A DNA stretch of 63,842 nt, counting the filler, from Octopus bimaculoides (taxonomy: Eukaryota): NCBI RefSeq assembly GCF_001194135.2. It is 4 parts of 4 records of this genome, joined end to end, with 100 filler letters (N's around TTAATTAATTAA, not from the genome) between each part and the next. Parts side by side here need not be neighbours in the genome. Positions count along the whole stretch, not along the records: positions 47,744 to 61,940 come from NC_068983.1; 3 more parts are not named here. The stretch is one strand, 5' to 3'. Below the pieces are notes generated by a model. That model had not been told where the DNA came from, made no database searches, and worked only from the letters and a program-made list of their open reading frames with translations. Made by a program: the position numbers and the translations under genes. Each line of letters starts with the position of its first letter. Position 1 is the first letter of the stretch. Positions 47,744 through 61,940 of this stretch are shown in pieces.

Positions 47744-48607
47744 AACAGTTAGTGATGGAAGAGCCCCTACCTCCTCCTTCGGAGGGAGAGATGGAGGCAG
47801 TGAAGCCCCCCCCCCCAAAAAAAAAGGGGGAAAGAAAGAAGGTGGGCAACCATTGTTGCTCACCGAAGGACCCCATGGTTGCGGGAACGAGGGAAGATCC
47901 TCCGGTTAAAGCAGAGGAACTACACCCTCCCGTAGCAAAGGGAAGAAAAAGAAGAAAAACGGGACAGTGCCAGTGGTTAATACACTGCCGGCATGTTCCG
48001 AAGCCCTGTCGGTGGCACAATTCCCACCGACGGTGGAAGTTGTAGCCTCGACCTAATGGAGGAACCATATTTGGCTTTCTCTAGAAGGTGAGAGGCGATG
48101 GAAAAGCTTTTTAAAAAGCTTGCCAGAGGAGGAGACATAACCTGCAATGGACTCCTTCCCTGTGGATGTATTCCACTTCCGATCGGGGTACCCTGATCTA
48201 GCACTATCGGAGTACCTGAGTGACACTTCGGGCCGGGTCGGGTGCCGGTGGGGCGGAAAATTGTAAGAGAATGAGTGCCTCATATTGAAAAGGCATGTGG
48301 CCCATGAGAAAAACTGTAAGAGGCCAAGTGCCTCATTTCAAGGACATGGTGTCATTTGTGGTAAGAGGATTAGTGCCTCATTGTAAGGACCTTGAGTCCA
48401 AAAGAAATATTGGTAAGAGGTTTATTGTCTCAAATTGTAAGTTCATAAAAGAACAATGTTTTAGAGAAGCAAAGATCTGCAGGTGTCTTCTGCCTTCCCT
48501 CATTAATATCACCCTGTTCATTATTCATCTCATCTCATTAATGTCCTTGTCCAGCCCGCAGCTACTCCATCTGTGTACGGCTTTCATAGCCAATAAAATG
48601 AAATAAA
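47744..48607 (+). mobile_element. Non-LTR retroelement fragment (possibly Tx1/L1-like): Pro/Lys-rich ORF remnant plus 3' UTR with AATAAA
   Basis: GC-rich EEPLPPPSEGEMEAVKPPPPKKKG segment and a structured 3' region, ending CCAATAAAATGAAATAAA directly before a headless SINE. The clade assignment is inference. Confidence 0.45.
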
Positions 48608-48978
48608 GTAGCTTGCTTACCAACCACATGGTTCCGGGTTCAGTCCCACTGCGTGGCACCTTGGGCAAGTGTCTTCTACTATAGCCTCGAACCGACCAAA
48701 GCCTTGTGAGTGGATTTGGTAGACGGAAACTGAAAGAAACCCATCGTATATATGTATGTGTGTGTATATGTTTGTGTGTCTGTGCTTGTCCCTCCAACAT
48801 CGCTTGACAACCGATGCTGGTGTGTTTACGTCCCCCTAATCTTGCGTTTCGGCAAAAGATACCGATATAATAAGTACTAGGCTTACAAAGAATAAGTTCT
48901 GGGGTCGATTTGCTCGACTAAACGCGGTGCTCCAGCATGGCTGCAATCAAATGACTGAAACAAGTAAAAGAATAAAAG
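48608..48978 (+). mobile_element. SINE group C lacking its first ~20 nt
   Basis: Starts GTAGCTTGCTTACC and has a complete tail GAAACAAGTAAAAGAATAAAAG. Confidence 0.92.
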
Positions 48979-49036
48979 ATTATGTGAATGAACAAATATT
49001 CTAATGATTCTACTGACACAACATCCTTGTAATCAA

Positions 49037-49190
49037 TCTAATATTGATTTCTAGTATGATTCCGCCGAGGTCGACTTTGATTTTCATCCTTTTAGGATCG
49101 ATAAAATAAATACCAGATGAGCACTAGGGTCAATGTAATCGTCTTAACCTCTCTTGCGAACATGCTGGCCTTGTGCTAAACTTTGAAAGC
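49037..49190 (+). mobile_element. 5'-truncated SINE group B with 16-bp TSD
   Basis: AATATTGATTTCTAGT on both sides; the copy begins at ATTCCGCCGAGG. Confidence 0.85.
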
Positions 49191-50424
49191 AATATTGATT
49201 TCTAGTCTAGACATAAGGTCATACATTTTTGGGAAGCTGTACAGACGATTAAACGAATACAGTTACTTGACTAGAAAATTATTTTATCGATCTCGGCATA
49301 TGAAAGGTAGATTTGACCTCGAGGAATGGGATGGGTAATGTGAATGCCGAACATAAAGAGGTGTAACTTAATACTGCATTTATACTTTATTCGACTGATT
49401 CTACTAACTTACTGTCTTCCTAGTAATTATACAATATTAAAATGTATTCTGCTGTGATGGCATTCGTTATATAGTCGAGCGCTTTAGCGACATCATAAAT
49501 ATATTTCATAAAAATTGCTGATATTTCAGACAAATTAATTTAATCAGAATCGTTTATGTGATTAAGAACTGTCACCGACTTCACCACTCCTCTTTGTCTT
49601 GTGTGACAATAACTATAGTGAATAATTATTATTGATTTCTTACTTTTGCAAAATTGAACAAAATGCCTCGCAAGGGATGGAAGCACTGGCAGCGTAAGTT
49701 AAGTTCTTGGCAGTGTTGTCGTTTAGTCCTAGATTATCTCTGATCGAGCAGACCTACAACGAACGGCTTTAAACAACTAGAATCATTCTCTTGCTTTTTT
49801 TCCTTTTTTTCAGGATAGCTAGAAATATATCATGCCATGTACCTTGCCTATTTTTCAAGATGGTACAGTGAGATTTTAGGGATGTTTGGCTATATATTGC
49901 AATCCACTTAGCGAACTTAGTCTGTTAGAAGCTTATCTTTTGTTCACGTTACGATTATAATTATGACAAACCAATGACCGACCAGAAGTAACTGCCTAAT
50001 CTCTCCACATAGCAATCTACCGCCTTAAAATGTAAACACTGGATAATACAGTTCAAGAGACATTATGTCTGGAAAAATTTTCTTGGCCGCAATATTTTTT
50101 ATCCTAGAGCTGCACTGTTAGAACTAAAGTGTAGTTAAATAACAACAACAATCTTACTGCTGTAGATGAACGACATTGTTATCGAATGACGTATTAAGAA
50201 AGGTTTAAAAAACAACACAACACTGCTAGAGTCTATACTTAATAGTTATAATTAGACACAAAATTTATTTAATTCTGTGGTTCATTAACTTTCTGTTCAC
50301 AGTTCAATTTTTGCAACAAAAAAACTGTTTGATGATGGTGGGAGTGACGTTAAGGTTTATAAAAACTCGACATGATGTAAATTTTGAATAAATAAACACA
50401 AATCTTAAGTGGAAATGAAATAGT

Positions 50425-50650
50425 TTCTGATTCAGGAACATGCCCTGCAATTCGAGAGGAAGGTATTAGTCGATACCATCAGGCCCATTGCTAAACTAGT
50501 ACTTTACTTTATCGACCCCCGGGGGGGGGGGGGGGATAAAAGCAAAGTTGACTTCAAAAGGATTTTAACTCAGAGTGTAGACATCCAGAAGAAATGTTGC
50601 AAAGCCTTTTTCTGACGTTCTATTGAATGTGTCAACTCGCTGCCCTAAAG
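50425..50650 (-). mobile_element. Degenerate SINE group B
   Basis: TTTATCGACCCC...GGATAAAAGCAAAGTTGAC...AACTCAGAG. Confidence 0.7.
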
Positions 50651-52209
50651 TTGAAATAAAATAACACCCACTAAATCACACGACACAGAAATTTGTCGTA
50701 TCCTACATTAGGCCCTTGACTAAAAGGTCTAATATATTTAGCGGGCTTCCACACTGTTTCCTACTACCCCGTTACCCTCACAAGATTCGTGTCGACCCGA
50801 GACGCTGGTATAAGACACCCAAAATGCCATGTGATGGAATGCTACTCGAGATTATATGATTGTGAAGCGAATTTCTGAATCACTTAGCTATTCTTGAATC
50901 CATTTACAGAAATTTATGGAGCGAAAGCCTCGGCTAAATGAAACTTCAGAAGATACTTTAACACTGAATACAACCAGCAGAAACTTGCCCTTTCAACTTA
51001 AACTTAATTTCCTTCGTAATTAGAATTATGTAATTCCATTTATGCATTCTGTTATCAAGGAGCCATTTATAACTAAATCTGCAGTTCTCTTCAATGATGT
51101 AAGCCTACATACTTTCATGTTTTCTAGTCATTAATACGATGAAATGCATTTCCTATAACATTTCAGTTATGCCACGAATAGAAAGTCACCTTCAGCTGCA
51201 TCTATTAAAAGATTATCTTTTACCTTATAATGTATTATTCTAGATAACATTAGGTAATACTAGCATACATTTCGATGTCATCAAATTAAAACAGAACTTT
51301 TTACTGAATATTAGTTCAATGTTTAAGTGTTAGATATTCACATATTAACTTCGTTTCATTAGATTTTAATGCTTCGTAACCCATAATGGAAAGTTGAATC
51401 AACACAGAAAACTTTGTCCTTACGTTCTGTGTTGAGGGCAAGTAAACTTGCACAGACCCATCCTTCTCTGTGCTATTAACTACATTCATAATTGTTCATA
51501 GGATGAATAGTAAAATATCAGGACAAGGAATTGAATCTGTGTCTTAGATTTCAATTATAATAAGGAGCTGATCACACTTCTCCGGCCTCGTTCGTATTCT
51601 ATCGATTGCTGTCCGCACAACAAATTAATATTATACAAGTAGTCTTAATTAGACAATCCTTTTACTGGCTATCGCATTTCTTATTTCCGTAACATATTTT
51701 AGATCCACTGCATTTTGTGAAGAACAAAATTAATCTCTCTATTTCGATATAACTCTAATCTATCGCTTAGGATAATCATAATTAAGCTGATTCTTTAAAT
51801 CTAAATCGGTTCAAATAATCGGATATTAGTTTACTGTTGAAAGAGAAATTGCGTAAAGGTGGCATAGACGCTTACAGTGAATAAATGCGCAACTGGATGC
51901 TTTACTGTATATAAGCTCGATTGCACAATATCCTGAGTTTAAATACTTCCAAAGAGAATTTATCTTTGCATTCTTTGATAATTCTTATTTCCGTAATCCA
52001 TTCGGTTGTTGAATTCTTTTGAAGACATAATTAATTCGGTGATCCAAGGAATAATAAATTATAATAATTTCTCGCTGCCTTCTCCAGAAAAAATATATAA
52101 GCTTATGCTTAAAATTTAACAAGGAACTAGTGAATTATATTTTACTCCAGTTTCTTATGGCTTGAATTTTATCAGTTTATCATACTTATTTACAGTTTAT
52201 ATATATATG

Positions 52210-52426
52210 TGACCGCGTGTGCAAATTTGGCGATTATCTTTCTCCGTGTTCTCTTCTTTGGACTTTTCCTATATTTCTGACGAAGATCTCCGATCGAAAC
52301 GTTAAATCCTCTTTCTTTTCTTTCCTTTCCTTAGCGTCCGATAACACTGTACTTTTTCCACGTCCTCGCGTTGTTTTTTCACGTTTTTTTCATGTTTTTT
52401 CTTGTTTGTTCGTGTTTAAATTGACT
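52210..52426 (+). mobile_element. Penelope-like terminal-repeat fragment containing a minimal hammerhead
   Basis: ATTT-CTGACGA-A-GATC-TCC-GATC-GAAA-CG-TT-AAAT at 52273-52307; T-rich tail; bounded by (TA)n. The PLE link follows from the known association of minimal hammerheads with PLE terminal repeats. Confidence 0.6.
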
Positions 52427-52903
52427 ATATATATATATATATATATNNNNNNNNNNNNNNNNNNNNNNNNNNNNNNNNNNNNNNNNNNNNNNNNNNNNNN
52501 NNNNNNNNNNNNNNNNNNNNNNNNNNNNNNNNNNNNNNNNNNNNNNNNNNNNNNNNNNNNNNNNNNNNNNNNNNNNNNNNNNNNNNNNNNNNNNNNNNNN
52601 NNNNNNNNNNNNNNNNNNNNNNNNNNNNNNNNNNNNNNNNNNNNNNNNNNNNNNNNNNNNNNNNNNNNNNNNNNNNNNNNNNNNNNNNNNNNNNNNNNNN
52701 NNNNNNNNNNNNNNNNNNNNNNNNNNNNNNNNNNNNNNNNNNNNNNNNNNNNNNNNNNNNNNNNNNNNNNNNNNNNNNNNNNNNNNNNNNNNNNNNNNNN
52801 NNNNNNNNNNNNNNNNNNNNNNNNNNNNNNNNNNNNNNNNNNNNNNNNNNNNNNNNNNNNNNNNNNNNNNNNNNNNNNNNNNNNNNNNNNNNNATTATTA
52901 TTA

Positions 52904-52955
<52 letters not shown>

Positions 52956-54812
52956 GTTCGTACAGTTACGTTTAATTATCAGAATAAAACAGTACATGTA
53001 TCTATCAATAACAAGCCTGTGGATTTGTTACATGCGTATTATATATATATATTAGAATTTGCTGTCTTGTCATTCATGTTCATTTAATAGAACCCAGTAA
53101 CATACTACGTTCGTACTAACTTTACTTGTTCCGATGTAAAATAAATCAATAACCCACAGCAAGAGTAGAATATAAACTGATATGCTAATTCTTTCTTCTG
53201 CTCATTATGGCAAAGTTATTATTAGACGAAAGTAAAATATTTTGATACCGCAGAGTTGAAGTATTTTAAATGTGGGTGTGCGTGTGTATCTTCCCAGGAG
53301 TGTGTGTGTGTGTGTGTGTACGCGAGCACGCACGTGTGTGTAAATAAGCTTTAATTTAAATTAGCATTTTCATTACGTGCGATGTATTTGATTTTAGACT
53401 AATTTTCAGTTTCATCATGTCACATTTCTCTCGAATCGTATTGATAGGAACAGGAATAATTTTCGAAGCTTTCGCTGTTATTGTTTGTTTTACATGATTA
53501 TTTATTTATATTTTGGGTGTGGGGGTGGATGTCTCTCGGTAACAATTTAGCCCCACTTTGATTTTGAGAAAGTTAAACTTTTAGTCTAATTGTCTTCTAA
53601 CGAGTTGAGTTGAAATTAGAAGTGTTCAAATAATCACTGCAGAACAAATTACTGGATAGAAAAAAATAATGATGAAAATTGAAGAAAGGTTGAAGAAAAA
53701 TTCATAATCTTCCGAAGATAAAAATAGTAAATATTTTCTTACATTTTCGCTGATAAAAAAAAATAACACTTTCTTGAAATGTAGAAAAACTTTAAACCTT
53801 TCATTTGAGAAGAAAAAAGAACAGACTTGTGTTGATAATTTTTATGTCTTTATTTTTAGGGGGTGGTTGTATTTGTGGAATAATCTTGCTCTACGTTTCC
53901 AGTCTAATCACGTATAAACATATTTACTTCAGGAATAACATTGATTTCTTGCTTTACTGTATGTCTAGGAAAATGTTGACTGAATTAGTTTGCAAATTCT
54001 GTTCACCAAGGCCTTTCTTATCTACCACTAAGCCAAGAACGACACTACTGCTAATTTGTTGATTATGCATGAACCTCTAGATGGGTGAGACATCGATATG
54101 ATAGGATGCTAGGCAACCAACTGGCCGATCTATAGTTTGTATACACGGTCAGTATTATTTAGCTTTAAACGATTCTAAATTGAAAACACCTTAATTGTAA
54201 GCAAATACGAGTGGTCTTGATCGTTTTATTTTGTTATTTGACTTTTTTTAGTTATAATTAAAGAAGTGCTTTTATAGGCATTTCAAAACTAGGTGTTATG
54301 AATAATTATTTGAAGTAACAGGATTATTATAAATAAAAAAATAAATAAAAATTTACTTTCTTTGGATGGCAATACTGAGTTCTTCACGAATGGAAAACTT
54401 ATCGGGCTTCATTCGCATTTTATATAACCACGTGATTCTATGGCAAACGCCATAGTTTCCACCCATCAAATAAGAAAGAATTTGTGAGTAGGAAATTAAA
54501 ACAAAATATCAGTGAAACTACTGCATCTTTCTTATTGAATTCGGACAACGATACGCAGAGAAAAAAGATGAGGACCACCAAGCAGCATCAGCAGCATCAG
54601 CAGCACACAAGGCGTTTATAGACCTTCCCAGACTAGTGAGATCAGTCATAATTTAGTTGAAATATATTCGTAGGTTGATATCTGCAAAAAAATATAATTA
54701 AATTAAATACAATAAACTAAGTTGTATGGAATTCCAGAAGACTGCATTTCTAAAGAAATGTTTTTAGAAAATGGGTAATATGTGGCTTACATCCGAGAAC
54801 TTGCATTAATAT

Positions 54813-55030
54813 TAGTTTCAAATTTTGGCAGAAGACCAGCAAGTTCAGGGATTGGGGTATGTCAATTACGTCGACCTCAGCACTTAATTCTTACCTTCTT
54901 TTTTTTTTTACCCGGAAAGAATGAAAGGCTAAGTCGGTCTTGGTGGAATCTGAACTCAGAACATAAAGACGGACGAAATGCCACTAAGCATTTTGTCCAG
55001 CATGCAAATGATTCTGCCAGCTTGCCGCCC
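54813..55030 (-). mobile_element. SINE group B with ~18-bp TSD
   Basis: GAGAACTTG[CT]ATTAATAT at 54795-54812 and 55033-55050. Confidence 0.88.
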
Positions 55031-55063
55031 AAGAGAACTTGTATTAATATCAATGTTTCACCG

Positions 55064-55270
55064 TAAGGCGGTGAGGTGACAGAATCGTTAGCATACCGGA
55101 CAAAATGCTTAACGGCATTTCGTCCATCTTTACGCTCTGAGTTCAAATTCCGCCGAGGTCGACTTTGCCTTTCATCCTTTCAGGATCGATAAAGTAAGTA
55201 CTAGTTAAGCACTGGGATCGAGTTAATCAATTTATTCTCTCCCCCGAATTTACTGGCCTTTTGCCACAAT
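55064..55270 (+). mobile_element. SINE group B, head-to-head with the previous copy
   Basis: AAGGCGGTGAGGTGACAGAATCGTTAGC...GAGGTCGACTTTGCCTTTCATCC. Confidence 0.9.
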
Positions 55271-56437
55271 ATTAACAATACCACAGAAAAGTGATGAAAT
55301 ATTCAATTTGATAAAATATTGAATTACTAGATAAGATACTGGCATTTAATACATCCCACAGTTGATGTTTCTGCGCTGCCTTAGCTGACCTTTCTGAGAG
55401 AAACATTCACCAGAGTGTTCTGAAAAATTATTGAAATATCATCTGCTCATGAAAGACGTTAGTTAAAGCTGGTTTAAACGCTAGCCTTACAGATCGTTAT
55501 CACATGAAAGTTTTAATATTAGGATAAAACTAATATTAAAGGTATCTCTACCTAGCGCATTTTGATTCTATTGTAACCCTTTTATTTATGATATAATGTC
55601 ATTCATAATATAATCTTATTTTTAATCAATGGAAAAATTAAGGCGGGATTGATGGAGAATGTAATATAAAACAAAAAAAAACGGAAGAAAAGAAAATGTT
55701 GGCAGAAGAAACTAACTACCTGTATAATACCACTGGCAAAAGATCCTTTTTCAGCTGATTCGAAAAACATAATATGATATTTAAAAATAGAGTAAAGTAT
55801 TTTCCAGGCAATTCAATTTTCAATTAAATTTCTGCTGAGTCACTTTTGCAGAGAAATAGAACAATTGATAACAGACAGGTTGTTCACAAATTATCTTTAC
55901 AACTTCCACAATTTACTGTATCTATAAGTTGAAATCCGTCGATGCGTTACGTGCTGTCAATGGTACCCGCATGGAAGTCTCCTGACGTTTCTAAAAAAAC
56001 TTTATTTCTTTGCCTATGTTTTTCAATAAATTCTGCTGAGATATCCTTGTTTTTCATGGTTTTGAGTTTTATTTTTTAGTTTTTTAGTTTTTTTTTTAGT
56101 TTTTTCTAATCGTAAAGGTAACTATGGACACCCATAATTTCATGCTCAGTGGGGTGGAAGAATGAGATTCCAAGACGTTCGCACGAGTGTTGTGTGTTTT
56201 GAATAACGTACGCAGCACAAATGAAATTAATTGACTTCTACAAAGGCTAGGGAATACTCCATGAACAAATGTTCACAAGAAATTTTTATTTTTCGTTATT
56301 GCACCATTTTGAAACTGCGAGGAGATAACTAGCAATCGTTACTAAATAAAATACCTGTGAGTATTAAAATTAACTTAAATGATTTTACCCATGTGAAGTC
56401 TTGTGTGTATGTTTTGAAATCTATATTATGAGACTTA

Positions 56438-56650
56438 GAAGGCGACGTGCTGGCAGAAATGTTAGCACGTCGGGCGAAATGCTTAGCCATATTAAGTCTG
56501 TCTTTACGTTCTTAGTTCAAATTCCGCCGAGGTCGCCTTTTCTTCTCATTCTTTCGGGGTCGATAAATTAAGTAACACTTGCGTACTGGGGTCGAGCTAA
56601 TTGACTGGACCCTCCCCCAAAATTTCGGGCCTTGTGCATAGAGTAGGGAA
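56438..56650 (+). mobile_element. Full-length SINE group B
   Basis: Head, B box, core and tail CCCCCAAAATTTCGGGCCTTGTG are present. Confidence 0.9.
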
Positions 56651-58324
56651 AAAAAGGAATATTACGAAACTTAGAACATATTTGACATTTCGATCATGAT
56701 ACGAGTGTTGATTTTGTTGAAAATTAAAAAGTGATGTAAAAGAAAACTAGATTCCTCTATGTCTTCAATTGCGATGTCATACACTTCATAGAAAATTTAC
56801 TTTTGAAATAATATAGATATGGTGAGCAATATAGTTAAGTACAAGTTACTATACTTGATGTGGTGATGCAAAAATAATAATTAACTGACAATGTAATCGT
56901 ATGGAGAAGAAAACTAATTGATGGTAATGAAAATTGGCAAGGGTGAGAACTCACATTTTGCACTAATCGTATTTTGGGTCGATTACAATTTCTGAAGTTT
57001 GCTCTTTGGCTCCCTTTGAGATAAATTTTCATTAACGCTCATTATTCATCTTCTCATTACGATTATAATTTCAATTGATTGAAAAATATTTTCGGCTCAC
57101 TAGCTTAAGTATGGCATCATGCATTTAACTATGTTCCTTATGCAGAAAGCACCCATGGGAAATTTTCCAATATCATAATGAACAATATGGCTTATTAGCA
57201 AAAGTAGTATTTTAAAAGACATCGACAACGAAAAAAACAAAACATGTAAAGGTCATCCAAGTAGAGTAAGGAAATTTGTACTATTAAACTGGTGAGAACC
57301 AGATGTAAAAAAATGTTAATGAAGCGAGGAGTAAAATGGCGGATTCATCTTACCGAATATAAATCAATAAATGCTAAGGACATTTTCTATTATAAGAATT
57401 GTAAATAATCAAACTGTTAAAGATATCTTAAAACGATAAAATCTAAGATAAGGAGCTGAACAACAGTACTTAGTATCTCAAAATTAACGCTCAACTTCTG
57501 ATCAGGAAGGCTTATGATCAAATGCATTCTACGTATGATCATTCCGCATTTTTGTATCAACACATAGGGTATGATTTGAGTGTATATGGCTGTTGTTTAT
57601 ACTTCAGCGACAATGCAGAGCTCTCATGCTGACTGCAAGTAAACTATTCAAGAAAGGAGAATGTGTAAATACACACATCAGAGACGGTAGTTTCGTTAGG
57701 TATTGCTTCATTACCATTTAGTATTCTCATGTGCATCACTTGGAGACGGATAGCCGTAACGGACAGATTTTCTCTCTGATCAAACTAAATTAGATGTAAG
57801 TTGTGCATGTTTTGATGTAAACACTTGTGGGACCGTTTTACACATTCTATAACAGTGTTTTTAAAGGTGTAGTTACAAGTTACACAGGCCAAAAAGGCTA
57901 ACAACAGTTTCATTCAATGATCAATACAAGAACTTTACTTCCATCCGTATTTCTAAAAGCATTTTTAATATTTCAAATGCTACGACAGAATTTAACATTT
58001 TTCTTTCCGTTTTTCTTTTTATATGGTGCAGTAAAATAATCAACTAATAGCAAAAACATGATGATGAGAGAAAACAGGAAATATGATTATAAATACAATT
58101 GAGAATGCAACAGATCGTGATGACATATCTAACGCTACTTGAGGGAACTGAATTATTAGTTAAAGGGTGAAATATTTCAGAATAAAGCTTCTGTGAATAT
58201 CTCCCAATTTTTTCAGGAATCTCCTGGTATGCTAGGAGGAAAATGTAAATTGTAGGAAATATTTTATATATTTCCTGGGGGATTCTTAGTTCAAACTTAC
58301 AAGATTATTGATACACATACATAA

Positions 58325-58380
<56 letters not shown>

Positions 58381-58944
58381 CACACTATATCACACCATAT
58401 CACACACCACGCACGCACACAAACACATACATGCACATACATATATATGTGGTATACTGAATTGGATCTACAACAAATTAGATGCAAATTTTGGCAGTTC
58501 TCTTTTAGAACAAAACGGAAACTACTCTACAGTTGTAAATACAAGCATCGGCACATCTAAAACCACAAAAACTAGCTACTTTAGGTCCCTGAACATTGCT
58601 AGCCAAAAACAGATTCATTAGTTACACAGTTCCTTCCGAACCAACCAGCAAGCTAACGGTTTAGAGCAGGATGTAATCAAATGTTAAATAATAAGTATTT
58701 TATACATAATTACTGCCTCTCATGAAAGATATATAATACAAGCTACTCCCTCTTGAACCGACAGCACATCCTATCAGATCTAAAGACGATGAGTATTATT
58801 TATTTTTTCCTTAGCTCCGACAAGGTAATATCTATACAATACTTTGTTATATAATCTGTAAGCGAAACACAATCAAATTAAGGAAAGGTATGTTAATTCA
58901 TGAAAAATGTCTACTTTCATAGAAATTATATTTGGCGCAAACAT

Positions 58945-59095
58945 GGGTGTGTGGTTAAGACATTCACTTTGCAACAACGCGGTTTGTGGGTTAGTCTCCT
59001 AACATATAACCTAAGGTAGGTGTCTTCTACTACAGCCCCGGGTAAAGTAATGCCTTGTAAATGCATTTGGTAGACTAGGACTATGTAGAACCCTA
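58945..59095 (+). mobile_element. Degenerate SINE group C 5' half
   Basis: GTGTGGTTAAG...GTGTCTTCTACTACAGCC...ATTTGGTAGAC. Confidence 0.65.
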
Positions 59096-59852
59096 TATAT
59101 ATATTGTAGAATATGTTTGCCAATTAAATGTGGCTAACGTAAGGCTAGAGATGGGAACGATGACCTCCCCTCACAAATACTAACCAGACACAGACAGTGT
59201 GTCGTTAGCCAGCTAGAGATGTTTTTTCTTGGGGTTAAAAACACCAGTAACATTGTCCTCTATGGGACCGACACATTTAGTTGGCAAATATATTTTACGA
59301 TTCCGCATTGTTACTATTTACCTTTCGCTCAGAGATTTAATATAGTGTGTGTGTGTGTGTGTGTGTNNNNNNNNNNNNNNNNNNNNNNNNNNNNNNNNNN
59401 NNNNNNNNNNNNNNNNNNNNNNNNNNNNNNNNNNNNNNNNNNNNNNNNNNNNNNNNNNNNNNNNNNNNNNNNNNNNNNNNNNNNNNNNNNNNNNNNNNNN
59501 NNNNNNNNNNNNNNNNNNNNNNNNNNNNNNNNNNNNNNNNNNNNNNNNNNNNNNNNNNNNNNNNNNNNNNNNNNNNNNNNNNNNNNNNNNNNNNNNNNNN
59601 NNNNNNNNNNNNNNNNNNNNNNNNNNNNNNNNNNNNNNNNNNNNNNNNNNNNNNNNNNNNNNNNNNNNNNNNNNNNNNNNNNNNNNNNNNNNNNNNNNNN
59701 NNNNNNNNNNNNNNNNNNNNNNNNNNNNNNNNNNNNNNNNNNNNNNNNNNNNNNNNNNNNNNNNNNNNNNNNNNNNNNNNNNNNNNNNNNNNNNNNNNNN
59801 NNNNNNNNNNNNNNNNNNNNNNNNNNNNNNNNNNNNNNNNNNNNNNNNNNNN

Positions 59853-59889
<37 letters not shown>

Positions 59890-59892
<3 letters not shown>

Positions 59893-61940
59893 TGGTTCCA
59901 ACTGAACCTAGGATTAATTTAAAAGACCATAAGAAGAACTTCCAAGATAACCCATCAGTGAGACTCATTTACCCATCTAAGTCTGACAATGGCAGACTCA
60001 GTAAGCTTATACTTGACAGGATTCTACCTCAAATAGTTCCTAATTTGTCCTTAAAGTTATGGATCAATACCGAAGAGGCCCTAAACTGGTTTAAATCTAT
60101 TGACAACATTAAAAACTTTTCGTCTATTCAGTTTGATATAAATAATTATTATTCTAGCATATCCCCTATTCTCCTAAATAAAACCCTCATTTTTGCTATG
60201 AATCGCTCCCTCATTACTAGGGATAAGATAGACATTATTTTATTAGCTAGAAAAACCATTATAGAATTTGATAACAAGCTCTGGACGAGAGCCGATACCC
60301 CAGAAAATTTTGATATACCAATGGGATCGAGCGATTCGGCTGAGGTTACAAACCTAGTGGGGACTTACCTCTTATATTGCTTAAACAAAGAAATCCCTGA
60401 ACTAAAAGGTGGTCTNNNNNNNNNNNNNNNNNNNNNNNNNNNNNNNNNNNNNNNNNNNNNNNNNNNNNNNNNNNNNNNNNNNNNNNNNNNNNNNNNNNNN
60501 NNNNNNNNNNNNNNNNNNNNNNNNNNNNNNNNNNNNNNNNNNNNNNNNNNNNNNNNNNNNNNNNNNNNNNNNNNNNNNNNNNNNNNNNNNNNNNNNNNNN
60601 NNNNNNNNNNNNNNNNNNNNNNNNNNNNNNNNNNNNNNNNNNNNNNNNNNNNNNNNNNNNNNNNNNNNNNNNNNNNNNNNNNNNNNNNNNNNNNNNNNNN
60701 NNNNNNNNNNNNNNNNNNNNNNNNNNNNNNNNNNNNNNNNNNNNNNNNNNNNNNNNNNNNNNNNNNNNNNNNNNNNNNNNNNNNNNNNNNNNNNNNNNNN
60801 NNNNNNNNNNNNNNNNNNNNNNNNNNNNNNNNNNNNNNNNNNNNNNNNNNNNNNNNNNNNNNNNNNNNNNNNNNNNNNNNNNNNNNNNNNNNNNNNNNNN
60901 NNNNNNNNNNNNNNNNNNNNNNNNNNNNNNNNNNNNNNNNNNNNNNNNNNNNNNNNNNNNNNNNNNNNNNNNNNNNNNNNNNNNNNNNNNNNNNNNNNNN
61001 NNNNNNNNNNAATAGTAAACTATATGCTAACACTAGTAATAAACCTATGTTAGTAGACAGTAATGTTGAATCAAATGATAAAAATAATAAGCATCCCACA
61101 ACTAAAAGAACTACTAATCATAATAATAATATTGTTCTGGGAAGTAATAGTAATCATAGCACACCCCATACCCACCCACGCAATAAATTTAAGAGAAAAA
61201 TAAAAACTCTATCTGGTTAAATATACCCTTCAACTGTGCAATATCCACAAATATTTACAAAAAATTCATGAATATTTTACAAAAAAATTTCCCTTCTTCC
61301 CACAGATATAGTAAAATCTTCTCTTGTCATACAGTCAGAATTTCTTACTCTACTCTTCCTAATGTGGGTACAATCATAGGTTAAACAAAAAGAACATCAA
61401 GTCAACTAGAATAAATGAAGTTACAAATAGTGGTCATACGAATACACATAATAATCTAGCTAATACCAATAATGATGCTACTAATAATTATACAAATAGA
61501 AGCGAAAATAACAATGGCGAAAGAAATTATGAAGGTAGTAACAATATACTTAGTCCTACCAACCATAATTTCAACCAACAAATAGAATGCATCAGTAATG
61601 ACGTTGCGGTTTTAACTGAAGTTGATGATAGGCCCAACTCCAATAGAAATAATAGTGATCAAGGACCTAGTTCATATAATATCAATATGCCTAATGTGGA
61701 AAGAATAAGTCCAACTGATAGCACATCAAGATATGAATTAAATAATGATGGTAATAATCAATATATACCTAATAATAGAATTGAAGAATTGATAAATGAT
61801 ATTAGTGTAAATAATTGTAGTAATAATAATAATAGAGATATTAGAAATAATATAGGTGGGGTTGATAACCCCATCATGTGCAACTGTAGAAAAAAGTCCC
61901 ATTGTCCTTTATTTGGATTTTGTTGCACCCGTAACGTAGT
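59890..61940 (+). mobile_element. Penelope-like retroelement (RT, thumb and Cys motif preceding a GIY-YIG endonuclease), truncated and frameshifted
   Basis: WINTEEALNWF, QFDINNYYSSI, FDIPMGSSDSAEVTNLVGTYLL...GG, IWLNIPFN...ISYSTLPN and CNCRKKSHCPLFGFC...NVV. These motifs are typical of PLEs with a C-terminal endonuclease. The GIY-YIG motif itself is cut off by the linker. Confidence 0.88.

What the first reader, a model, noticed from the sequence alone, without database searches (positions are those of the whole stretch)
48263..48454. Four-copy array of a two-hairpin RNA module with compensatory base changes
Seen: units start at 48263, 48316, 48361 and 48413 (spacing 53, 45, 52 nt). Each reads GTAA-hairpin 1-A-rich linker ending AA-hairpin 2. 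Hairpin 1 stems: GAG/CTC, GAGG/CCTC, GAGG/CCTC, GAGG/TCTC. Hairpin 2 stems: GGC/GCC, GAC/GTC, GGAC/GTCC, GTTC/GAAC. The loops diverge freely while pairing is kept, including a double compensatory change (GGAC:GTCC to GTTC:GAAC). In units 2 and 4 the two loops are complementary (CCA/TGG and TTTAT/ATAAA), which hints at a kissing interaction. I do not recognise it as a known ribozyme. Inference: a selected, multimerised RNA motif in a retroelement 3' UTR, such as an RT or RNP recognition array, a stability element or a new catalytic fold.
Basis: partly seen in the sequence, partly recalled or inferred. Interest (0 to 1): 0.7.

Follow-up and report, generated by a model that had tools for sequence, protein, structure and literature searches.

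The report
Degenerate four-unit repeat in octopus UTR
This is a real but short, decaying four-copy repeat of about 50 bases, lying just behind a strongly folded RNA region at the end of an octopus gag-like gene copy; the proposed two-hairpin RNA fold is only weakly supported, so it is a modest curiosity rather than a new RNA class.

Summary
The four-unit direct repeat is real. Units start at 48263, 48316, 48361 and 48413. The 21-nt core GTAAGAGG-N3-AGTGCCTCAT gives 4 hits against 0.02 expected.

The piece is octopus DNA. The array lies on the sense strand, about 310 nt behind the ancestral stop codon of a truncated copy of an Octopus sinensis gene (LOC115225585, weak CCHC-knuckle hit). It follows directly on a 490-nt GC-rich RNA domain that folds very strongly (z -6.7). 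Where a paralogue is available, that fold is conserved with compensation (alifold z -8.1 on +, -4.3 on -). So "3' UTR" is supported, but "retroelement" is unproven.

The two-hairpin module is weakly supported:
- Hairpin 1 is conserved sequence with no covariation.
- Hairpin 2 pairs in register in all four units with three compensated changes (12-13 of 500 shuffles as good).
- Single units do not fold better than shuffles (z 0 to -1.6).
- In context only 1-2 of the 8 stems are predicted to form.
- The loop-loop "kissing" complementarity is at chance level.

There is no Rfam match. No further copy was found in any reachable collection, and the one paralogue lacks the array.

Best reading: a duplicated 3'-UTR cis-element, possibly a multivalent protein-binding platform. 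A neutral minisatellite is nearly as likely.

The parts
47746..47955 (+). Remnant of the C-terminal tail of an ORF (cut by the edge of the piece), homologous to residues 212-280 of Octopus sinensis XP_029652367.1 (LOC115225585)
   Evidence: phmmer E 4.3e-10; BLASTP 38/70 identical; nucleotide homology to L123 10632-10906 at 72.5%; protein name
47956..48045 (+). Start of the ancestral 3' UTR. Here it is read through for 30 more codons, because a 6-nt deletion removed the TAA present in the paralogue. It holds two hairpins conserved with L123.
   Evidence: Alignment A2 columns 205-300; translation; RNAalifold pairs 223-266 and 277-294
47763..48255 (+). GC-rich (53%), closed multi-hairpin RNA domain of 18 helices. 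It is closed by GCCCCUACC/GGUGGGGC and ends 8 nt before unit 1.
   Evidence: MFE -218 kcal/mol, z -6.7 on + and -4.5 on -; helix list with 17 G-U pairs; two-sequence consensus fold z -8.1 on + and -4.3 on -; distal half alone z -3.8 on + and -1.9 on -
48263..48315 (+). Unit 1 (53 nt): core 48263-48283, hairpin 1 48267-48281 (GAG/CTC), hairpin 2 48292-48302 (GGC/GCC)
48316..48360 (+). Unit 2 (45 nt): core 48316-48336, hairpin 1 48320-48334 (GAGG/CCTC), hairpin 2 48343-48353 (GAC/GTC)
48361..48412 (+). Unit 3 (52 nt): core 48361-48381, hairpin 1 48365-48379 (GAGG/CCTC), hairpin 2 48387-48399 (GGAC/GTCC)
48413..48465 (+). Unit 4 (about 53 nt, the most diverged): core 48413-48433, hairpin 1 48417-48431 (GAGG/TCTC with G-U), hairpin 2 48441-48454 (GTTC/GAAC)
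48466..48605 (+). Unstructured tail of the flank, ending in two AATAAA signals (48592-48597 and 48602-48607), immediately before a SINE insertion
   Evidence: z +0.18; AATAAA positions; SINE boundary from matches to O. sinensis and O. bimaculoides loci

Best explanation
The array is a local tandem duplication (4 units of 45-53 nt) of a segment of the 3' untranslated flank of an octopus gene copy. That gene encodes a CCHC-knuckle, gag/ORF1-like protein. The array starts 8 nt after the end of a 490-nt strongly folded RNA domain, and lies 130-340 nt upstream of AATAAA signals.

Each unit keeps three features:
- a 21-nt bipartite core, GUAAGAGG-N3-AGUGCCUCA(U), which can close into a 3-4 bp hairpin;
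- a UUGUAAG-like linker;
- a second 3-4 bp stem-loop whose stem has changed by paired substitutions.

The most likely working is a reiterated cis-element on the transcript. It would be a multivalent platform for a sequence-specific RNA-binding protein, for example the element's own knuckle protein or a partner polymerase, with the small stems presenting the motif. It is not an autonomous two-hairpin fold and not a ribozyme.

Shown: the repeat, the core, the in-register pairing of hairpin 2, the position behind the stop codon, and the + strand RNA structure next door.
Inferred: that the array is transcribed with the ORF, that the core is under constraint rather than merely young, and that a protein reads it.
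For: The repeat and its core are far beyond chance.

Conservation is uneven. 14 of the 17 core columns are invariant while the 3 central columns and the 3' half vary. P is 0.0004 over all columns and 0.012 over the well-aligned 42 columns.

Hairpin 2 has 14 of 16 cells paired, 3 cells compensated, and only 12-13 of 500 shuffles as good. An equally good helix anywhere has P 0.0004-0.035.

Sense-strand 3' UTR position:
- homology of the upstream frame to XP_029652367.1;
- ancestral stop at about 47955;
- AATAAA at 48592 and 48602.

The flanking RNA domain is conserved in structure on the + strand: 57 pairs, of which 4 are double-compensated and 11 changed on one side through G-U. The consensus fold has z -8.1 on + against -4.3 on -. 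The locus is therefore read as RNA in this orientation.
Against: - Folding energy gives no support: unit z scores are 0 to -1.6 and the whole array is -1.97. Competing inter-unit pairings dominate in context.
- Hairpin 1 has no covariation.
- There are only four sequences, and the register of unit 4 needs a 1-nt loop indel.
- The closest pair of units (2 and 3) shows no significant clustering of differences on its own (P 0.32).
- The only paralogue reached (O. sinensis L123) has no array.
- The window copy looks pseudogenised: the stop codon is lost and a C11A9G5 run replaces coding sequence.
- No further copies turned up in metagenome, viral or protein collections.
- No transcript data are available here.
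Confidence: 0.4

Rival explanations
1. Neutral, decaying minisatellite. A roughly 50-bp segment was duplicated by slippage or unequal exchange and is drifting. The short stems are inherited inverted repeats plus chance. The 'core' only looks conserved because the A/T-rich, indel-prone 3' halves align badly.
For: - Unit identities are 62-77% and the edge unit is the most diverged.
- There is no thermodynamic signal.
- Hairpin 1 is invariant rather than covarying.
- The array is absent from the paralogue.
- The host copy is pseudogene-like.
- Clustering of conservation weakens to P 0.012 on well-aligned columns, and is not significant for the closest pair of units.
Against: Three compensated cells and no broken inner pair in hairpin 2. 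The 17 core columns carry 3 variable sites, against saturation in the 3 central columns.
Confidence: 0.35
2. DNA-level array of binding sites, such as a homotypic transcription-factor or zinc-finger protein cluster, or transposase subterminal repeats. The 21-bp core would be read as double-stranded DNA.
For: A conserved bipartite core with a variable 3-bp spacer at roughly 50-bp spacing is typical of reiterated protein sites. GAGG-N7-CCTC is a dyad.
Against: - No inverted partner array or terminal repeat exists within 13.5 kb on either strand.
- The covarying stem (GGAC/GTCC to GTTC/GAAC) argues for a structure, not for fixed half-sites.
- The neighbouring conservation is strand-specific RNA structure.
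Confidence: 0.08
3. Exon-intron border with reiterated 5' splice sites or U1 snRNP sites. The GC-rich domain would be an exon ending at 48262, and each unit would begin with a GUAAG donor-like site.
For: GTAAG occurs 6 times in 200 nt. The first copy sits exactly where GC content drops from 0.53 to 0.38. The O. sinensis gene has three protein accessions with the identical sequence, which would fit transcript isoforms differing only outside the coding region.
Against: The six sites are copies of one another, so they are not independent. The conserved core extends 14 nt beyond any donor consensus. The paralogue has no GTAAG at the matching place. No acceptor or downstream exon was identified.
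Confidence: 0.06
4. The array is pre-existing host repeat DNA into which the GC-rich element inserted, or beside which it ends. It would then not be part of the transcript unit at all.
For: There is an abrupt change of composition and of folding at 48255-48262. Homology with the paralogue ends before the array.
Against: Homology already ends at 48012, well inside the structured domain, so loss of homology does not mark the end of the element. The left flank is missing, so no target-site evidence can be had.
Confidence: 0.05
5. MicroRNA-related: a target-site or sponge array, or a miRNA locus.
For: The core is 21 nt long with a variable centre, like a bulged miRNA site. GUGCCUC in units 1-3 equals the seed implied for Ovu-Novel-79, whose 8-mer site is listed as GAGGCACA in Data S3 of PMC9699675.
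Against: - The match is sense to the seed, not complementary, on the transcript strand.
- On the minus strand only a 7-mer would be explained.
- No site reading GTGCCTC is listed in the held tables.
- My rough estimate, not computed with a tool, is that such a seed coincidence arises by chance about 10% of the time.
- The best inter-unit hairpin has 17 bp, but by hand pairing (no tool) only about 13 of 22 pairs for the arm that would carry that seed, so it is not precursor-like.
Confidence: 0.03
6. A new self-cleaving or otherwise autonomous RNA fold, with kissing loops between the two hairpins.
Against: No Rfam hit even at E 10. Loop complementarity is at chance level. Stems of 3-4 bp have near-zero predicted occupancy. 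There is no conserved unpaired core other than AGUG.
Confidence: 0.02

Closest known systems
Reiterated protein-binding repeats in 3' UTRs, such as the 19-nt DICE repeats of 15-lipoxygenase mRNA or the tandem TGE repeats of C. elegans tra-2 (recalled from my own knowledge, not tested here)
   Same: Short direct repeats placed between stop codon and poly(A) signal, with a conserved core, a variable spacer, and no need for a stable fold.
   Different: No binding protein, no transcript evidence and no orthologues are known for this array. The units are longer (about 50 nt) and carry small stem-loops.
3' tails of stringent-type LINEs (UnaL2, ZfL2-1, ZfL2-2), in which ORF2 protein binds a stem-loop that precedes short terminal repeats (PMC4176376, PMC1636434)
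   Same: A small stem-loop with a conserved loop, next to a short repeated motif, at the 3' end of an RNA. In those LINEs the loop sequence matters more than the stem sequence. The unit start GTAAGAG loosely resembles the AAGTAAA(A/G)GA tail repeats of the octopus SINE copies seen here.
   Different: The array is not at a demonstrable element end, since 140 nt more follow. It is not shared with the SINEs in the piece. No ORF2 is linked to it. The module is multimerised four times with 50-nt units rather than 5-8 nt terminal repeats.
HeT-A-type non-LTR elements, which encode only a Gag-like knuckle protein and carry a long 3' UTR (recalled from my own knowledge)
   Same: An ORF with a knuckle-like motif, no RT ORF behind it, and a long structured or repetitive 3' untranslated part.
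   Different: Retroelement status of the octopus gene is unproven (zf-CCHC E 0.058). There is no telomeric context and no sequence similarity.
Ordinary minisatellites or VNTRs inside transposable elements and UTRs
   Same: Head-to-tail units of 45-53 bp that diverge towards the edge of the array and are lineage- or copy-specific.
   Different: Conservation is concentrated in a bipartite 21-nt core, and one stem changed by paired substitutions.

Membership tests
Any Rfam family (including hammerhead, twister, HDV-like, IRE, flavivirus 3' UTR modules) | Match to the family covariance model at or near the gathering score | tested here: not met
   No match at E<=1 in the whole piece. On 47744-48620 at E<=10 there were only noise hits of 13.7-18.3 bits, against gathering scores of 42-100.
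Tandem repeat / minisatellite | At least 2 head-to-tail copies of a 10-100 bp unit | tested here: met
   Four copies with spacing 53, 45, 52; profile E 6e-12 to 7e-9.
   Hairpin 1 has 0 pairs with a change on both sides. Hairpin 2 has 2 pairs (3 cells), with 12-13 of 500 shuffles as good. Only 4 sequences are available.
   Unit z scores are -0.01, -1.58, -1.37 and +0.08. In context, 6-7 of the 8 stems have pair probability <=0.2.
Kissing-loop complex | Loop-loop complementarity beyond chance and present in all units | tested here: not met
   P 0.22 (unit 2) and 0.24 (unit 4); only 2-nt matches in units 1 and 3.
Stringent-type LINE 3' tail | Stem-loop plus short repeats at the extreme 3' end of an element that encodes EN/RT | tested here: inconclusive
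   The upstream part is cut by the edge of the piece. The paralogous locus has no RT/EN ORF behind the gene. A further 140 nt follow the array before AATAAA and the SINE.
Stringent-type LINE 3' tail | Tail shared with a partner SINE | tested here: not met
   The unit profile finds nothing in the SINE copies of the piece or of L113, L114 and L123. Only a loose GTAA(A)G(A) resemblance exists.
Stringent-type LINE 3' tail | Specific binding by the cognate ORF2 protein | not testable with these tools
   Needs binding or retrotransposition assays (as in PMC4176376).
miRNA target-site array | Seed complement of a miRNA of the species on the transcribed strand, repeated | tested here: not met
   The + strand carries the seed sequence itself (GUGCCUC, as implied for Ovu-Novel-79), not its complement. 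GTGCCTC does not occur as a listed site in the held tables, which are cut.
miRNA precursor | Hairpin of about 60 nt with a roughly 22-nt duplex, mostly paired | tested here: not met
   The best hairpin (units 1/2) has 17 bp. By hand pairing (no tool), the arm beginning AGUGCCUC would pair at only about 13 of 22 positions.
3' UTR cis-element | Lies between the stop codon and the poly(A) signal, on the sense strand of a gene | tested here: met
   ORF homology and ancestral stop at about 47955; AATAAA at 48592 and 48602. Transcription itself is not testable here.
Retroelement (gag/ORF1-type gene) | Recognisable Gag/ORF1 domains and a linked RT, or multiple dispersed copies | tested here: inconclusive
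   Only a sub-threshold zf-CCHC hit (E 0.058, 14 bits against a cut-off of 20.8). The structure model was unusable (pLDDT 39). There is one 50%-identity cluster in 1.84 billion representatives, two non-syntenic copies and no RT nearby.

The most novel reading that the evidence does not exclude
The array and the 490-nt folded domain together form the recognition and packaging 3' UTR of a cephalopod family of gag-only, trans-mobilised elements, or of a domesticated capsid-like gene. The four units would be multimerised hairpin sites that load the knuckle protein or a partner reverse transcriptase. That would be a multivalent version of the single stem-loop tail of stringent LINEs.
Probability: 0.12. 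Interest if true: 0.6.

Novelty: new member of a known kind. Interest (0 to 1): 0.3.

Why it matters
As it stands, the array is one more lineage-specific tandem repeat in a repeat-rich cephalopod genome.

It would matter if other copies show that the core and hairpin 2 are kept. It would then be a defined, reiterated RNA recognition site attached to a conserved, heavily structured 3' UTR of an uncharacterised octopus knuckle-protein gene. Such a site could be used to find the binding protein and to ask whether the gene family is a mobile, gag-only element.

The firmer result of this work is the neighbouring domain. Its fold is conserved with compensation on the coding strand, which is unusual enough to deserve its own follow-up, also as a possible ADAR substrate in a heavily RNA-editing animal.

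Tried and rejected
- TRF does not see the array because it is too diverged.
- Rfam gave nothing on the whole piece (E<=1) or on 47744-48620 (E<=10). There are no tRNAs.
- Pattern scans of the metagenome and viral collections with the core gave 109 and 3 loci. Each holds a single match of about 20 nt and none holds an array, so these are chance hits.
- Exact-protein look-ups of three ORFs over or beside the array found nothing on record.
- Word-indexed protein searches with the upstream frame and with the ORF across the array found no hit.
- Pfam on all local ORFs gave nothing.
- About 128 kb of octopus or octopus-like DNA, fetched through other proteins, contains no second copy of the array. 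Apart from L123, it contains no copy of the GC-rich domain either.
- A scan of viral contigs with P0012 found no relative.
- The PDB sequence search gave only noise. The AlphaFold single-sequence model had pLDDT 39, so no fold search was made.
- The miRNA idea gave only a sense-strand seed coincidence with Ovu-Novel-79. Mature sequences are not in the held supplements.
- A resemblance of unit 2 to the 28S rRNA R2 target site (GCCAAATGCCTC), and of the hairpin 1 loop to an IRE, were both recalled from memory. Both were dropped. Only unit 2 has GCCA; the IRE needs CAGUG plus a bulged C; and Rfam found neither LSU nor IRE.
- A fifth, degenerate unit downstream (CTCATTAATGTCCTTGTCC) is not supported by the profile.
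- A literature search for LOC115225585 returned no paper.

Full report
WHAT THE PIECE IS. The finding's piece (47744-61940) is AT-rich, about 34% GC, with three runs of N. It is octopus DNA.
- An RT-like ORF fragment at 59889-60413 has its closest named relatives in Octopus sinensis and O. bimaculoides.
- Loci fetched from those two genomes share dispersed repeats with 48606-49008 (86% identity), 49059-49199, 54808-55268 and 56436-56646.
- From memory, the first of these is the common tRNA-derived octopus SINE.
- Nothing in those loci matches 47744-48605.

THE OBSERVATION. The repeat is real.
- The repeat finder reports four copies starting at 48257+6, that is 48263, 48316, 48361 and 48413, with spacing 53, 45 and 52.
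- The core GTAAGAGGNNNAGTGCCTCAT, with up to 3 mismatches, occurs four times, all on the + strand, against 0.02 expected.
- A profile HMM of the units finds only these four in the piece, at E 6e-12 to 7e-9, with the next hit at E 2.3.
- Unit identities are 62-77%, which is why TRF misses the array.

IS IT A TWO-HAIRPIN RNA MODULE? Hairpin 1 (GAGG-N7-CCTC) is simply conserved sequence. Three pairs never vary. The fourth is G-C in two units, G-U in one and an A-C mismatch in one, so it gives no evidence for or against pairing. Its loop is not free either: only the first three bases vary, and AGTG is kept.

Hairpin 2 is better supported.
- MAFFT on the segments alone puts the four stems in one register, with one extra loop base in unit 4.
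- 14 of 16 cells pair. The two inner variable pairs read GC/GC/GC/UA and GC/AU/AU/UA.
- 12-13 of 500 shuffles do as well, and every slid register is much worse.
- In a column-permutation test that searches the whole unit for any fully paired 3-bp helix with as many pair types, P is 0.0004 (Watson-Crick only) or 0.035 (with G-U). This should be multiplied by about 4 for the freedom in placing unit 4.

Energetically there is no support.
- Single units have z -0.01, -1.58, -1.37 and +0.08, and only units 3 and 4 give the two-hairpin MFE.
- The whole array has z -1.97 on + and -2.97 on -.
- In the context of the flank, only unit 4 hairpin 2 (pair probability at least 0.9) and sometimes unit 3 hairpin 1 (0.09-0.9) are populated. 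Units pair with one another instead, for example a 17-bp hairpin between units 1 and 2.
- The proposed kissing complementarity is at chance level (P 0.22 and 0.24) and is absent in units 1 and 3.
- No Rfam family matches, even at E 10.

A SECOND SIGNAL: UNEVEN CONSERVATION. Fourteen of the 17 core columns (1-8 and 12-20) are invariant, while columns 9-11 and the 3' half vary. A window this good arises in 0.04% of permutations over all 54 columns, and in 1.2% if only the 42 well-aligned columns are used. For the closest pair of units alone the clustering is not significant (P 0.32). So there is a moderate hint that the 21-nt bipartite core is constrained, or was homogenised.

CONTEXT, WHICH CHANGES THE PICTURE. 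The 519 nt upstream are 53% GC and fold extraordinarily well.
- MFE is -218 kcal/mol, with z -6.7 on + and -4.5 on -.
- There are 18 helices of up to 20 bp. The whole is closed by GCCCCUACC (47763) with GGUGGGGC (48254), so it ends 8 nt before unit 1.
- The distal half alone has z -3.8 on + and -1.9 on -. The 140 nt after the array are unstructured, z +0.2.

The +2 frame, open from the edge of the piece, gave no hit in the word-indexed search. The exhaustive HMMER search found one relative, P0012, at E 4e-10.
- P0012 is XP_029652367.1, 'uncharacterized protein LOC115225585 [Octopus sinensis]'.
- The match is to its last 70 residues.
- P0012 has only a sub-threshold zinc-knuckle hit (E 0.058), no PDB relative and an unusable single-sequence model. 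'Gag/ORF1-like' is therefore my reading of a C-x-E-P-G-H-x4-C motif plus a basic tail, not a result.

Its locus, L123, aligns with window 47744-48012 at 72.5% identity. There is no synteny beyond that, so the two are paralogues. The paralogue's TAA stop falls at window position about 47955. The window copy lost it through a 6-nt deletion and reads on to 48045. The array therefore begins about 310 nt into the ancestral 3' UTR, on the sense strand. Two AATAAA signals follow at 48592 and 48602, just before the SINE.

RNAalifold on the two copies gives 57 pairs. Four changed on both sides and 11 changed on one side through G-U. The consensus energy is 8.1 sd below class-preserving column shuffles on the + strand, against 4.3 sd on the - strand. 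The neighbouring domain is thus a conserved RNA structure read in the orientation of the ORF.

The paralogue has neither the distal half of the domain nor the array. No RT/EN ORF follows its gene.

WHAT IT MOST LIKELY IS. The array is a tandem duplication inside the 3' untranslated flank of this gene copy. There are two nearly balanced readings.

(a) Confidence 0.40: a reiterated cis-element on the RNA. Each unit offers the 21-nt core and a small stem-loop, giving a multivalent site for a sequence-specific RNA-binding protein.
- In favour: the core conservation, the compensated stem, and the position next to a conserved RNA structure.
- Analogues, recalled from my own knowledge, are the DICE and TGE repeats. 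The stem-loop tails that ORF2 proteins of stringent LINEs bind, where the loop matters more than the stem sequence, are documented in PMC4176376.

(b) Confidence 0.35: a neutral, decaying minisatellite.

Minor rivals are:
- a DNA-level array of binding sites (0.08);
- reiterated GUAAG donor or U1 sites at an exon-intron border (0.06), noting that GC content falls from 0.53 to 0.38 exactly at 48262/48263;
- host repeat DNA that merely abuts the element (0.05);
- a miRNA connection (0.03);
- a ribozyme or kissing fold (0.02).

The miRNA lead was checked. The 8-mer site listed for Ovu-Novel-79 is GAGGCACA (Data S3 of PMC9699675), so its seed is GUGCCUC. That is the same sequence as the core of units 1-3 on the + strand, not its complement. 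I estimate, without a tool, that such a coincidence has roughly a 10% chance. No precursor-like hairpin carries that arm.

LIMITS. No orthologue or further paralogue of the array could be reached.
- The metagenome and viral scans gave only single chance matches.
- Exact and homology protein look-ups failed.
- About 128 kb of fetched octopus or octopus-like DNA holds no copy.

VERDICT. The repeat is real and its address (a 3' UTR beside a conserved RNA structure) is interesting. However, the claim of a selected two-hairpin module rests on one 3-bp stem in four sequences. It is not a member of any known RNA family, and nothing suggests catalysis. Interest 0.3; new member of a known kind (tandem repeat or cis-element in a 3' UTR).

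Noticed in passing
window 47763-48255 (+): A 490-nt GC-rich closed multi-hairpin RNA domain (z -6.7) that overlaps the end of the ORF and the start of the 3' UTR. Its proximal 270 nt are conserved in structure with an O. sinensis paralogue (57 pairs, 4 compensated, 11 changed through G-U; alifold z -8.1 on +, -4.3 on -). There is no Rfam match. It could be a packaging or recognition signal, or an ADAR substrate.
   Followed up: partly
window 47746-48045 (+); L123 10001-10846: The ORF remnant is homologous to the C-terminal tail of XP_029652367.1 (LOC115225585, O. sinensis; 281 aa, knuckle-like CLEPGHIKKNC). In the window copy the stop codon was removed by a 6-nt deletion, so the frame runs 30 codons into the hairpins. 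The two loci are not syntenic.
   Followed up: partly
window 47806-47830: A homopolymer block C11 A9 G5 stands where the paralogue has ordinary coding sequence (GATGAGGTGGAAACCTCGAAAAAAGG). It forms a CCCCC/GGGGG hairpin. It may be a sequencing or assembly artefact, or a sign that this copy is a pseudogene.
   Followed up: no
window 48104-48121 and 48181-48198: A perfect 18-nt palindrome, AAGCTTTTTAAAAAGCTT (two HindIII sites), and a second near-palindrome around GGTACC, both inside the structured domain.
   Followed up: no
window 48275-48281, 48328-48334, 48373-48379: GUGCCUC in units 1-3 equals the seed implied for the octopus-specific miRNA Ovu-Novel-79 (listed 8-mer site GAGGCACA in PMC9699675 Data S3). 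The match is in the sense orientation and is probably coincidence.
   Followed up: partly
window 48606-49008, 49059-49199, 54808-55268, 56436-56646: Dispersed octopus repeats (SINE-type) shared at 70-86% with loci of O. sinensis and O. bimaculoides. The first is 5'-truncated and starts right after the AATAAA signals. At 54808-55268 both strands carry ORFs with similar products, which looks like two copies in inverted orientation. SINE tails read AAGTAAA(A/G)GA repeats.
   Followed up: partly
window 59889-60413, 61011-61220, 61687-61940 (+): Fragments of a retroelement ORF, broken by N gaps. Relatives include O. sinensis and O. bimaculoides proteins and TARA ocean metagenome scaffolds, where RVT_1 lies about 2 kb downstream of the homologous ORF. 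The last fragment ends in a CNCRKKSHCPLFGFCC cysteine motif. This element is unrelated to the array, which lies 11.5 kb upstream of it.
   Followed up: partly
window 52447-52893, 59367-59852, 60416-61010: Assembly gaps (runs of N). The first two are flanked by microsatellites ((TA)n, (ATT)n, (GT)n), typical of a short-read draft scaffold. Long 'ORFs' listed across them are artefacts.
   Followed up: no
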